This document shows, piece by piece, positions 48,701 to 51,700 of a stretch of 64,000 bases of DNA. Position numbers and translations under genes: made by a program. The notes beneath the pieces are model-generated. The model was not told where the DNA came from. It ran no database searches and saw only the letters and a program-made list of their open reading frames with translations. How positions within the stretch are numbered: the first letter of the stretch is position 1; each line of letters opens with the position of its first letter. The stretch covers positions 29,652,628-29,716,627 of the forward strand of contig OZ037767.1 of NCBI GenBank assembly GCA_964035545.1. Reading direction: 5' to 3'. The DNA is from Bugula neritina. Taxonomy: Eukaryota; Animalia; Bryozoa.

Positions 48701-51700
48701 TTCGTTTCACTTTATTTTGCTGATTTTTAGTGTTAACCCTGTTTCCTCACATTAACAAATGTCATTGTCTACATAACTTAGCTTGCTGATTTTGCCAGTC
48801 ACAATTTGTTGTGATTGTTACAAATTTCTTACGCAAGTGTTGTCTTCTCTCAATAGAGAAACTGCTGAAGGAAACCAGCAGTGAGATGTCTCTATGACAT
48901 TTACATAGCAAAAGTTATTGCAGATTATCTTTATTTTGTGATTTTTCTTCTTTTTCCTGATTTAGTAATTTTCATGTACTGTTAGCTTCTTGACTAATAG
49001 TTTACCTGCTTCTAACACCTGGGGTAGCGGCGGCCATGGTTTCGTAACTCCTGTCAAGTTCAACATACAAATGGAGTTTAACTCTACGAAAATCTATTAG
49101 TTTTAACCAAATCAATGATAACTGTAATTGCTGTTCATTATGCTCACAGCTTGGTTCTTCTTATAATGCTCAAGCAATTTAGAACAGAGCTTCGTCTGCA
49201 TATTAGCCTTGGTTCTTAAAAGGTTAGCTCTTATTTATCTAGGGTGTGTTGATGGTTGGCCCTCCAGGTACTGGTAAGACCATGTTAGCTAAGGCCGTCG
49301 CTACAGAGTGTGGTACTTGCTTCTTTAATGTCTCTGCCTCGTCTCTCAGCTCCAAGTATCGGGGCGAGAGTGAAAAACTTGTGAAACTTCTCTTTGAAAT
49401 GGTAAGATAACTCCGCATAACTCTCTGTTGGTAGGACAACTCCCAGTCTCGTATTCAGCTGCATCTTGGTAATAGTAATTCTGCCACCACGTCATTTTGT
49501 GTGCTATGATTCGCCCTAAACTTTTTCTAACTTTGGTTTTGGCGGGTCATATTTTAAAAAATGGCAAATTCTCTTTTCATGAGAGCAGCTGAATATTTAG
49601 ACTGTGTTTATTGTTCTACCAACATTTCCATGATATTTGTTTAATTGATGCATGTAATACCTGGCAGGGTGTTATGATGGTTGGTCCACCAGGTACTGGG
49701 AAAACTATGCTAGCCAAAGCAGTGGCCACTGAATGTGGCACAACTTTCTTTAATGTTAGCTCGTCCAGTCTAACCAGCAAATACCACGGTGAAAGTGAGA
49801 AGCTGGTTAGACTGCTGTTTGAAATGGTAAGTGGATGATGGTACTGTAAGTACTGATAATGTTAAGTAACTTAGTCTGTTTACTCATAATCCGTATGACT
49901 ACTTGGAACATTGTAGTTATATATTAACCAGCCAAGTATTCTGTGGTGCAAAATTTTTACTTTTTTGTCAAAAGTCTAGTGTATTGAGATTTTATTGAAA
50001 TTTTTACAAAATGAAAGTCTAATTTTGTTCCATTTGGAGTTGTTTCACCGCTTTTTATCCAGCGTAAACTCACCCATTGGCCTCTGTATTTGAAAGTTAT
50101 GACTATCTATTTCTTATATAATATTTCTTCCGGTAAGGAAGAAGACAACTTCTTCCATGTCATGTATTTGATTTGTTTTTAGGCCCAATTCTACGCTCCA
50201 AGCACTATATTTATTGATGAAATAGATTCGATTTGCTCAAAGAGAGGCTCGGATAATGAACACGAGGCTAGTAGGCGTGTGAAATCCGAGCTCCTTATTC
50301 AAATGGATGGTGTTGGCGGGGCATGTGGGCAGGATGCAACAAAAATGGTAGGTTGTCTCCCCTCTTTTTATTGTCTGATGTTAAGATCTTCTGCACTCTA
50401 GTATTTTAGTGTGACTAAAAAACTCAACACTTACTGGTTGTGATCATTCTTGTGTTTTGTGTAAACGATCTTTTACAAAGCACGCAGATTAACATTTCTG
50501 TAATTATGTATTTCTGAAATAACCGTGAACATATTATTTTTTACAATTTTACTGTCCTGTTTAATATATTTGATTTCTCTGTATTCAGAGTAGATTCAAT
50601 GCTAGTGCTACAAAATGTGCCAAGTGGGTACATATATTTAAACTGCATATCCGAATAGCACAATACATCAGTTTCTACTCATACACTTGAGGTACCAATT
50701 AGTCGATAGAAGCAGTCACCTGCAATCACCTGTCATCATGTGACATGATTATTGAATTGGTAACGTAAGTTGTGGAACTTTGCTTAGGTGATGGTGTTAG
50801 CAGCTACCAACTTCCCGTGGGACATAGATGAGGCCCTGAAAAGGAGGTTAGAGAAGAGAATATACATCCCTCTGCCTTGTAAAACCGGCAGAGTTGAGCT
50901 TCTAAAGATAAACCTTAAAGAAGTAAGATGCTGAGATTTTATATGCCAACCAATAAACTCGTCTCTTGTGTTTTTTTGATCTCCACTTTCTAATTGTGAC
51001 TTTACAGGCATACATTGATAAGCTATTGTGCTGTAGCTGTTAGGTTTACATCAAAGCAAAGGGAATCGTTACAAGTAATTCTTTATCACTTCTCAAACTC
51101 AAACTGTGTCCATCCTTTAGTATTATCAGCAACTTTGGCCATTTTGGAGTTGTTTGATTTCTGTTACTGTATTGCCTGGCTTTGACTTATTCTGCAATGA
51201 CCTCTAGTGTTTAAGTTAAACAATGGATATAAATAGTTACCAAGGTACAGACTATATACACAGTAACCACATGGTACAGACTATACACAGTAACCACATG
51301 GTACAGACTATACACAGTAACCACATGGTACAGACTATACACAGTAACCATATGGTACAGCCTATACGCAGTAATCACGTGGTACAGACTATACACAGTA
51401 ACCACATGGTACAGACTATACGCAGTAACCACGTGGTACAGACTATACGCAGTAACCACGTGGTACAGACTATACACAGTAACCACATGGTACAGACTAT
51501 ACACAGTAACCACATGGTACAGACTATACACAGTAACCACATGGTACAGACTATACACAGTAACCACATGGTACAGACTATACACAGTAACCACATGGTA
51601 CAGACTATACACAGTAACCACATGGTACAGACTATACACAGTAACCACGTGGTACAGACTATACACAGTAACCAGATGGTACAGACTATACACAGTAACC

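What the first reader, a model, noticed from the sequence alone, without database searches (positions are those of the whole stretch)
49243..49826. Katanin p60 carries two intact, probably mutually exclusive exons that swap the tubulin-gripping pore loop (KYRG versus KYHG)
Seen in sequence: two tandem 159-nt phase-0 exons, each with AG/GT sites and no stops. They encode the same 53-aa Walker A to pore-loop-1 segment with only 6 amino-acid differences (L/M, C/T, A/S, S/T, R/H, K/R), but many codons differ synonymously. That pattern indicates an old duplication with both copies under purifying selection rather than an assembly artefact or a dead copy. Established knowledge: pore-loop 1 of katanin and spastin (K-W/Y-R-G in katanin) grips the glutamate-rich tubulin C-terminal tail. 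Inference: one gene makes two severing enzymes, or mixed hexamers, with different sensitivity to tubulin polyglutamylation or pH, for example ciliary versus spindle forms. Including both exons would keep frame but duplicate the P-loop, so active exclusion is expected. I recall a KYHG form in sea-urchin katanin (unverified), which would make this switch ancient.
Basis: partly seen in the sequence, partly recalled or inferred. Interest (0 to 1): 0.85.

Follow-up and report, generated by a model that had tools for sequence, protein, structure and literature searches.

The report
Ancient splice switch in katanin's grip
The gene for the microtubule-cutting enzyme katanin carries two alternative copies of one exon, which put either arginine or histidine at the spot that grips tubulin; the same pair occurs in sea urchins, starfish, molluscs and a tube worm, so many invertebrates probably make two differently tuned cutters from one gene.

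Summary
Confirmed and extended. The window's only katanin p60 gene (10 coding exons, 501 aa; probably a Bugula neritina-type bryozoan) has two tandem 159-nt phase-0 exons, A (49243-49401, KYRG) and B (49668-49826, KYHG). They are 71% identical, with saturated synonymous sites and 6 amino-acid changes. RNA contigs from four studies join each exon to the flanking exons, and no A-to-B joint is listed. The same R-then-H pair lies in seven other genomic loci (annelid, molluscs, echinoderms). RefSeq holds equal-length X1/X2 isoforms that differ only in this exon; the classic sea-urchin p60 (O61577) is the His form. Residue 40 (C. elegans R267) is the only column that differs in all 15 species pairs. 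Vertebrate, arthropod, tardigrade and cnidarian records sampled have only Arg. New mechanistic lead: the intron between the exons is 57-68 nt in six loci; in the two longer cases one predicted stem collapses it to 67 nt (window, z -6.7) and 64 nt. This points to steric exclusion. No paper describing the switch was found. Not shown: tissue regulation, any difference in severing, and a single origin (exon trees are unresolved).

The parts
45770..45937 (+). katanin p60 coding exon 1 (start codon, MIT domain)
   Evidence: PF21126 E 9e-18; 96% to P0259; boundaries
46529..46725 (+). coding exon 2
46939..47107 (+). coding exon 3 (linker)
47273..47394 (+). coding exon 4
   Evidence: RNA loose end joins it to exon 5
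48576..48681 (+). constitutive exon 5, upstream of the pair; donor GTGTGC
   Evidence: joined in RNA to both A and B
49243..49401 (+). alternative exon A (6a): Walker A to pore loop 1, KYRG (Arg form)
   Evidence: RNA joint 48681>49243 in 4/4 runs, loose end matching exon 50183 in 4/4
49402..49667 (+). 266-nt intron between A and B; in-frame stop two codons after A if retained; seen retained in RNA contigs of 3 of 4 runs
49426..49624 (+). predicted long intronic stem (outer arms 49426-49439 / 49611-49624; inner 49452-49462 / 49585-49595) leaving 24 + 43 = 67 nt outside it
   Evidence: -81.8 kcal/mol, z -6.74; 12 other katanin intron windows z -1.8 to +1.4. Predicted, not probed
49641..49649 (+). 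candidate branch points (YTRAY-like, A at intron nt 243 and 247; 44 or 48 nt from the 5' splice site if the stem is discounted)
   Evidence: motif scan only
49668..49826 (+). alternative exon B (6b): same segment, KYHG (His form)
   Evidence: RNA loose ends matching exon 5 in X1, X2, X11 and exon 50183 in X1, X2; identical to the segment in P0259
50183..50347 (+). constitutive exon 7 (Walker B, pore loop 2 with the His-Glu matching C. elegans H307/E308)
50788..50922 (+). coding exon 8
   Evidence: RNA joint 50347>50788
51992..52151 (+). coding exon 9
   Evidence: RNA loose end
52442..52566 (+). last coding exon (Vps4_C, stop)
   Evidence: PF09336

Best explanation
A single katanin p60 gene makes two full-length 501-aa isoforms by mutually exclusive splicing of a tandemly duplicated exon. 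SHOWN: both exons are intact, are spliced into mRNA between the same flanking exons, and are conserved as an Arg-first, His-second pair in four phyla; Arg/His at pore loop 1 is the one difference kept everywhere. INFERRED, about 75%: the pair arose once, before protostomes and deuterostomes split, and was lost in vertebrates and arthropods (Arg kept) and resolved to His in rotifers. INFERRED, about 65%: co-inclusion is blocked sterically, because the A donor and the B branch point are too close for one spliceosome; most species keep the intron at 57-68 nt, and here and in Lamellibrachia a long RNA stem folds a longer intron down to the same effective length. Transcripts that use both A's acceptor and B's donor are left with the intron and a premature stop. 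INFERRED, about 60%: replacing the permanently charged Arg (R267 equivalent, which lines the pore and bridges to E308 of pore loop 2) by His weakens the grip on acidic tubulin tails or makes it pH-dependent, so the splice choice tunes severing rate or preference for glutamylated microtubules in different cells.
For: Sequence and selection. RNA joints and loose ends, no A>B or skip-both joint listed. Same pair with AG/GT in Mytilus-like SRR29152242, Lamellibrachia, Pinctada, Asterias, Antedon, S. purpuratus, Haliotis. Gene models holding both copies, R then H, in Tegillarca, Mytilus coruscus, Mya; these ranked top for having two copies, not for having His. Equal-length RefSeq isoform pairs with all differences inside this exon in 9 species, and R and H forms also in scallops and venerid clams. 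Column 40 differs in 15/15 species, the next most frequent column in 8/15. Intron lengths 57, 58, 59, 60, 62, 68 nt where other introns of those loci are about 150 nt to several kb; stems in the 266- and 182-nt introns. Steric threshold of about 50 nt between donor and branch point: PMC7969005, PMC5740500. X-R-G motif recognises tubulin: PMC8369831. R267-E308 bridge matters for ATPase and severing: 10.1101/2020.11.25.398420.
Against: RNA evidence is from assembled contigs: junction sides are only about 20-23 letters, rare joints are dropped, and depth cannot give usage. Exon trees without codon 40 are unresolved (DNA p-AU 0.29; protein p-AU 0.03 against one His clade, 52 columns), and some lineage-specific residues occur in both exons, so conversion or separate duplications are possible. 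The stem shows no compensatory change between the two bryozoan lineages (10 of 16 differences unpaired, 2 keep the pair, 4 break it). Branch points are unmapped, and the 50-nt limit comes from vertebrate systems; introns of about 60 nt are spliced in some invertebrates (own knowledge). All four RNA runs hold both forms, so no tissue specificity is shown. No functional data.
Confidence: 0.7

Rival explanations
1. Real mutually exclusive exons, but arisen more than once (for example separately in spiralians and echinoderms), with Arg>His reached convergently.
For: Exon trees do not recover a His clade; Arg>His needs one base change; lineage-specific residues are shared by both exons in Mya/venerids, Tegillarca and scallops; tandem exon duplication recurs in bilaterians (PMC5740500).
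Against: Same exon, same boundaries, same order and the same 57-68 nt (effective) intron in 8 of 8 loci; gene conversion or shared structural context explains the tree equally well.
Confidence: 0.2
2. The His exon gives an attenuated or dominant-negative subunit: it sets severing strength by its share in mixed hexamers rather than making an enzyme with another substrate preference.
For: R267 and its bridge to E308 are reported as needed for activity; both forms occur together in all four RNA runs.
Against: O61577, the His form, is the sequence of the founding sea-urchin katanin, which severs microtubules (activity from own knowledge); rotifer katanins found are all His.
Confidence: 0.15
3. Exclusion is achieved by splicing regulators or competing long-range pairings, and double-inclusion products are merely removed; the short intron and the stem are incidental.
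For: No branch-point mapping; no covariation in the stem; several public gene models include both exons.
Against: The stem is unique among the gene's introns and appears only where the intron is long; no strong competing pairing between flanking introns and both exons; double inclusion keeps frame, so decay would not remove it; the both-exon models are probably predictions from genomic DNA.
Confidence: 0.25
4. Assembly artefact or dead duplicate exon.
For: Such an artefact exists in Myotis davidii.
Against: 71% identity with saturated synonymous sites, both exons in RNA, the five exonic differences checked in the RNA lineage are synonymous, conservation in four phyla.
Confidence: 0.01

Closest known systems
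Katanin p60 (KATNA1/KATNAL1, C. elegans MEI-1, sea-urchin O61577)
   Same: MIT + AAA + Vps4_C domains; exon A is closest to human KATNAL1 (6b5c, E 2e-26) and keeps the X-R-G motif; exon B matches O61577 at the pore loop.
   Different: Reviews treat the pore-loop Arg as conserved or invariant and mention no splice switch. Here one gene encodes both Arg and His loops. Vertebrate and insect records sampled have Arg only.
Tandem-duplicated mutually exclusive exons in enzymes and motors (PKM 9/10, OGDH 4a/4b, muscle myosin heavy chain clusters)
   Same: Homologous exons of equal length and phase that swap one functional segment; old and under purifying selection.
   Different: No report found for katanin or for a AAA+ pore loop; the conserved difference is a single residue; absent from vertebrates and Drosophila, where such exons have been catalogued.
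Steric exclusion (alpha-tropomyosin 2/3, alpha-actinin, OGDH distant branch points)
   Same: Donor and branch point of the intervening intron closer than about 50 nt.
   Different: Those use a distant branch point with a long AG-free tract. Here the intron is either simply very short or folded short by one stem; AGs at intron nt 181-198 rule out a long AG-free zone.
Dscam-type docking site/selector pairing
   Same: RNA structure in introns implicated in exclusion.
   Different: The stem found lies wholly inside the intervening intron and has no competing partner.

Membership tests
Katanin p60 A1/AL1 | N-terminal KATNA1-type MIT domain | tested here: met
   PF21126, E 8.7e-18 on exon 1
Katanin p60 A1/AL1 | Single meiotic-clade AAA domain with Vps4_C end; best matches are katanins | tested here: met
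Katanin p60 A1/AL1 | Pore loop 1 X-R-G motif, isoform A | tested here: met
   KYRG
Katanin p60 A1/AL1 | Pore loop 1 X-R-G motif, isoform B | tested here: not met
   KYHG. The founding katanin O61577 also fails it, so the motif is not strictly defining
Katanin p60 A1/AL1 | ATP-dependent microtubule severing | not testable with these tools
   needs purified protein
Mutually exclusive tandem-duplicated exons | Adjacent homologous exons, same length and phase, canonical splice sites, open frames | tested here: met
Mutually exclusive tandem-duplicated exons | Each exon joined in RNA to both flanking constitutive exons | tested here: met
   (A: 4/4 runs both sides; B: 3 runs upstream, 2 runs downstream listed; sides of about 20 letters)
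Mutually exclusive tandem-duplicated exons | No exon-to-exon joining and no skipping of both | tested here: inconclusive
   No such joint listed in 4 runs, but contigs drop rare forms; RefSeq pairs hold one exon each
Mutually exclusive tandem-duplicated exons | Both copies under purifying selection and conserved across species | tested here: met
   pS 0.65-0.87 versus pN 0.04-0.12 within six species; 15 species pairs
Mutually exclusive tandem-duplicated exons | Tissue- or stage-regulated choice | not testable with these tools
   only contigs, with coded sample labels
Steric-interference MXEs | Donor to branch point under about 50 nt | tested here: inconclusive
   Near-certain by length in 57-68-nt introns; in the window 44-48 nt only if the predicted stem forms; branch points unmapped
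Steric-interference MXEs, OGDH/tropomyosin type | Distant branch point followed by a long AG-free pyrimidine tract | tested here: not met
   last internal AG at intron nt 198 of 266
Dscam-type docking/selector MXEs | One docking site pairing competitively with a selector at each exon | tested here: inconclusive
   no strong candidate among inverted repeats in two species; no close relatives for covariation

The most novel reading that the evidence does not exclude
The ancestor of protostomes and deuterostomes had a splice-controlled, pH- or glutamylation-sensing switch in katanin's substrate pore. The His form serves one class of microtubules (for example eggs after the fertilisation pH rise, or cilia) and the Arg form another; exclusion is held by a conserved effective intron length that RNA stems restore when the intron grows. 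Classic sea-urchin katanin biochemistry was then done on only one of two enzymes.
Probability: 0.3. Interest if true: 0.85.

Novelty: new variant of a known kind. Interest (0 to 1): 0.72.

Why it matters
The pore-loop Arg is central to current models of how katanin reads the tubulin code. A natural Arg/His pair in an otherwise identical protein, kept in both echinoderms and spiralians, is a ready-made test of what that charge does, and it suggests that severing can be tuned by splicing. It also means that the sea-urchin p60 on which the family was founded is the atypical His isoform, which bears on comparisons between sea-urchin and vertebrate or worm katanin. For splicing, eight orthologous introns that are either about 60 nt long or folded to that length give a clean case for testing steric exclusion by RNA structure. 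Practically, several mollusc and annelid gene models wrongly appear to join both exons.

Tried and rejected
Assembly artefact or dead exon: rejected. Two separate genes: rejected, flanking exons are single. Distant branch point of OGDH type: rejected for the window. A perfect 13-bp stem inside exon B (49766-49778 / 49802-49814) is not conserved in other His exons, so it was not given a role. Exon trees: no resolution. Stem covariation between two bryozoan lineages: weak, no compensatory pair. Contig look-ups for P0271 and P0273 found nothing; their sister isoforms worked. Zehr 2017 and 2020 could not be read, so R267 statements come from a review and preprints. Five literature searches aimed at the switch found no description; subscription papers are mostly not covered. 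Earlier scan notes: none. No hemichordate, amphioxus, tunicate, brachiopod or priapulid sequence surfaced by name, so these are untested. No structure was predicted, as solved katanin structures already place the residue.

Full report
Observation. Exon A (49243-49401) and exon B (49668-49826) are each 159 nt, open, phase 0, and flanked by AG and GTAAG. They differ at 46 positions, 32 of them third codon positions; 32 codons differ silently and 6 change the residue. Synonymous sites are saturated (pS 0.84) and dN is 0.12. Both are closest to katanin p60 (KATNAL1, PDB 6b5c, E 2e-26) and match the AAA model.

The gene. Ten coding exons from 45770 to 52566 give 501 codons with one of the two exons, with a KATNA1 MIT domain at the start and Vps4_C at the end. 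A database protein named KATNAL1 of Bugula neritina (P0259, KAF6017790.1, 501 aa, His form) matches the exons at about 95-100%, so the window is probably from B. neritina or a close lineage; this is an inference. The 216-Mb genome shows no second katanin p60 locus.

RNA. Contigs of four runs from four studies were laid on 48560-51000 (the runs are guessed to be RNA, and most introns have no cover, as expected of RNA). The joint 48681>49243 stands in all four. Behind exon A the loose letters are the start of exon 50183 in all four. Before exon B the loose letters are the end of exon 5 in three runs, and behind B they are the start of exon 50183 in two (some rows were not shown). No A>B joint and no joint skipping both is listed. 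Contigs with the A-B intron unspliced occur in three runs, while the introns further downstream have no cover. Limits: junction sides are about 20-23 letters, contigs drop rare forms, and depth cannot give usage ratios. The RNA lineage differs by about 5% in introns; the five exonic differences checked are synonymous.

Distribution. The same two exons, Arg first and His second, with AG/GT ends, lie in genomic DNA of Lamellibrachia, Pinctada and a Mytilus-like run, Asterias and Antedon, S. purpuratus and Haliotis. Gene models that join both copies exist for Tegillarca, Mytilus coruscus and Mya, again R then H. RefSeq has equal-length isoform pairs whose differences all fall inside this exon in S. 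purpuratus, two Lytechinus, three Haliotis, two Asterias, Antedon and Anneissia, and R and H forms in scallops and venerid clams. S. purpuratus X1 is identical to O61577 and reads KYHG; X2 reads KWRG. Across 15 species pairs, residue 40 differs in 15; the next most variable column differs in 8, in both directions. Named vertebrate (23 motifs), insect and other ecdysozoan (35) and cnidarian (4) records read KYRG only; five rotifer records read KYHG, and one of them is intronless. The Xenia locus has a single Arg exon with the same boundaries. These absences rest on a sample. The Myotis double exon is an assembly artefact and a useful negative control.

Origin. Trees of the exons without codon 40 are unresolved; holding the His exons together is not rejected on DNA (p-AU 0.29) and weakly rejected on 52 protein columns (0.03). 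Some lineage-specific residues occur in both exons of a species, which fits gene conversion or shared constraint. One origin before the protostome-deuterostome split is therefore inferred from identical architecture (about 75%), not from phylogeny.

How exclusion may work. Including both exons keeps the frame, so decay cannot police it. The intron between them is 57, 58, 59, 60, 62 and 68 nt in six loci, where the other introns run from about 150 nt to several kb. In the two loci where it is longer, it is predicted to fold into one long stem. In the window, intron nt 25-223 pair (-81.8 kcal/mol, z -6.74, none of 200 shuffles as good), leaving 24 + 43 = 67 nt; twelve windows from the gene's other introns give z from -1.8 to +1.4. 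In Lamellibrachia the stem leaves 29 + 35 = 64 nt (z -2.87). Branch-point-like motifs 23 and 19 nt before the acceptor would sit 44 or 48 nt from the A donor once the stem is discounted, under the roughly 50-nt steric limit cited in PMC7969005 and PMC5740500. Retention of exactly this intron in RNA fits an intron that cannot be spliced. Against: the stem is only predicted, the differences between two bryozoan lineages give weak support and no compensatory pair, and the limit was measured in vertebrate systems. I put this mechanism at about 65%. What chooses A or B is not known.

What the switch may do. Residue 40 corresponds to C. elegans MEI-1 R267 (K265-W266-R267-G-D269 aligned by motif). 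The X-R-G motif forms the positive surface that engages tubulin (PMC8369831); R267 is called invariant and bridges to E308 of pore loop 2, with loss of activity on mutation (10.1101/2020.11.25.398420); spastin has Val here. The E308 equivalent is in the shared exon 7. His is mostly uncharged near neutral pH (established chemistry), so the His isoform should grip acidic tails less or in a pH-dependent way. It is not simply dead, since O61577 is the founding katanin sequence and rotifers appear to have only His. A functional difference is strongly implied by the conservation; its nature (glutamylation preference, pH, rate, mixed rings) is untested, about 60% for tuning of tail grip.

Novelty. 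Mutually exclusive tandem exons are a known kind, and the isoforms already sit unremarked in RefSeq. No paper on the katanin switch was found, with the caveat that most subscription journals are not searched. What is new is the swap of a supposedly invariant AAA+ pore-loop residue by splicing, its spread over four phyla including the founding sea-urchin enzyme, and the constant effective intron length. The joined spliced model was not built or searched; all searches were exon by exon or with database proteins.

Verdict. Real, expressed and ancient-looking; mechanism and function are testable inferences. Interest 0.72.

Noticed in passing
window 40182-41531 (-): Intronless 449-aa ORF with FERM_N, FERM_M, FERM_C and FA domains, head to head with the cyclophilin gene; possibly a retrocopy or a large single exon.
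   Followed up: partly
window about 42910-44175 (+): Multi-exon cyclophilin gene (PF00160 on one exon; PPIL3-like by eye) directly upstream of katanin.
   Followed up: partly
window 49766-49814: Perfect 13-bp inverted repeat inside exon B with the His codon in its loop; not conserved in other species' His exons.
   Followed up: yes
window 47400-48560 and 51240-51960: Simple-repeat arrays fill two katanin introns (CTA-rich and CTCTA-rich tracts; a 28-nt tandem unit); they produce the spurious ORFs.
   Followed up: no
L027 (Brachionus calyciflorus): Intronless katanin with the His loop; all five named rotifer katanins seen are His, which suggests fixation of one splice form, perhaps by retroposition.
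   Followed up: partly
P0404, P0406, P0412, P0274, P0275: Heterobranch gastropod and sea-cucumber records seen are His only (KWHG, KYHG); whether the Arg exon is lost or just unannotated was not checked.
   Followed up: no
L028:12188-13551 (Myotis davidii): The annotated KATNA1 with a doubled exon is an assembly duplication: identical copies and flanks around an N gap.
   Followed up: yes
L022 about 9788-9946 and 10395-10529 (Lamellibrachia): A further pair of similar segments downstream of the R/H pair in the tblastn map; could be a second duplicated exon in that species.
   Followed up: no
window 48841-49270: One RNA run (X1) also holds the intron upstream of exon A unspliced, which would fit an intermediate on the way to the His isoform.
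   Followed up: no
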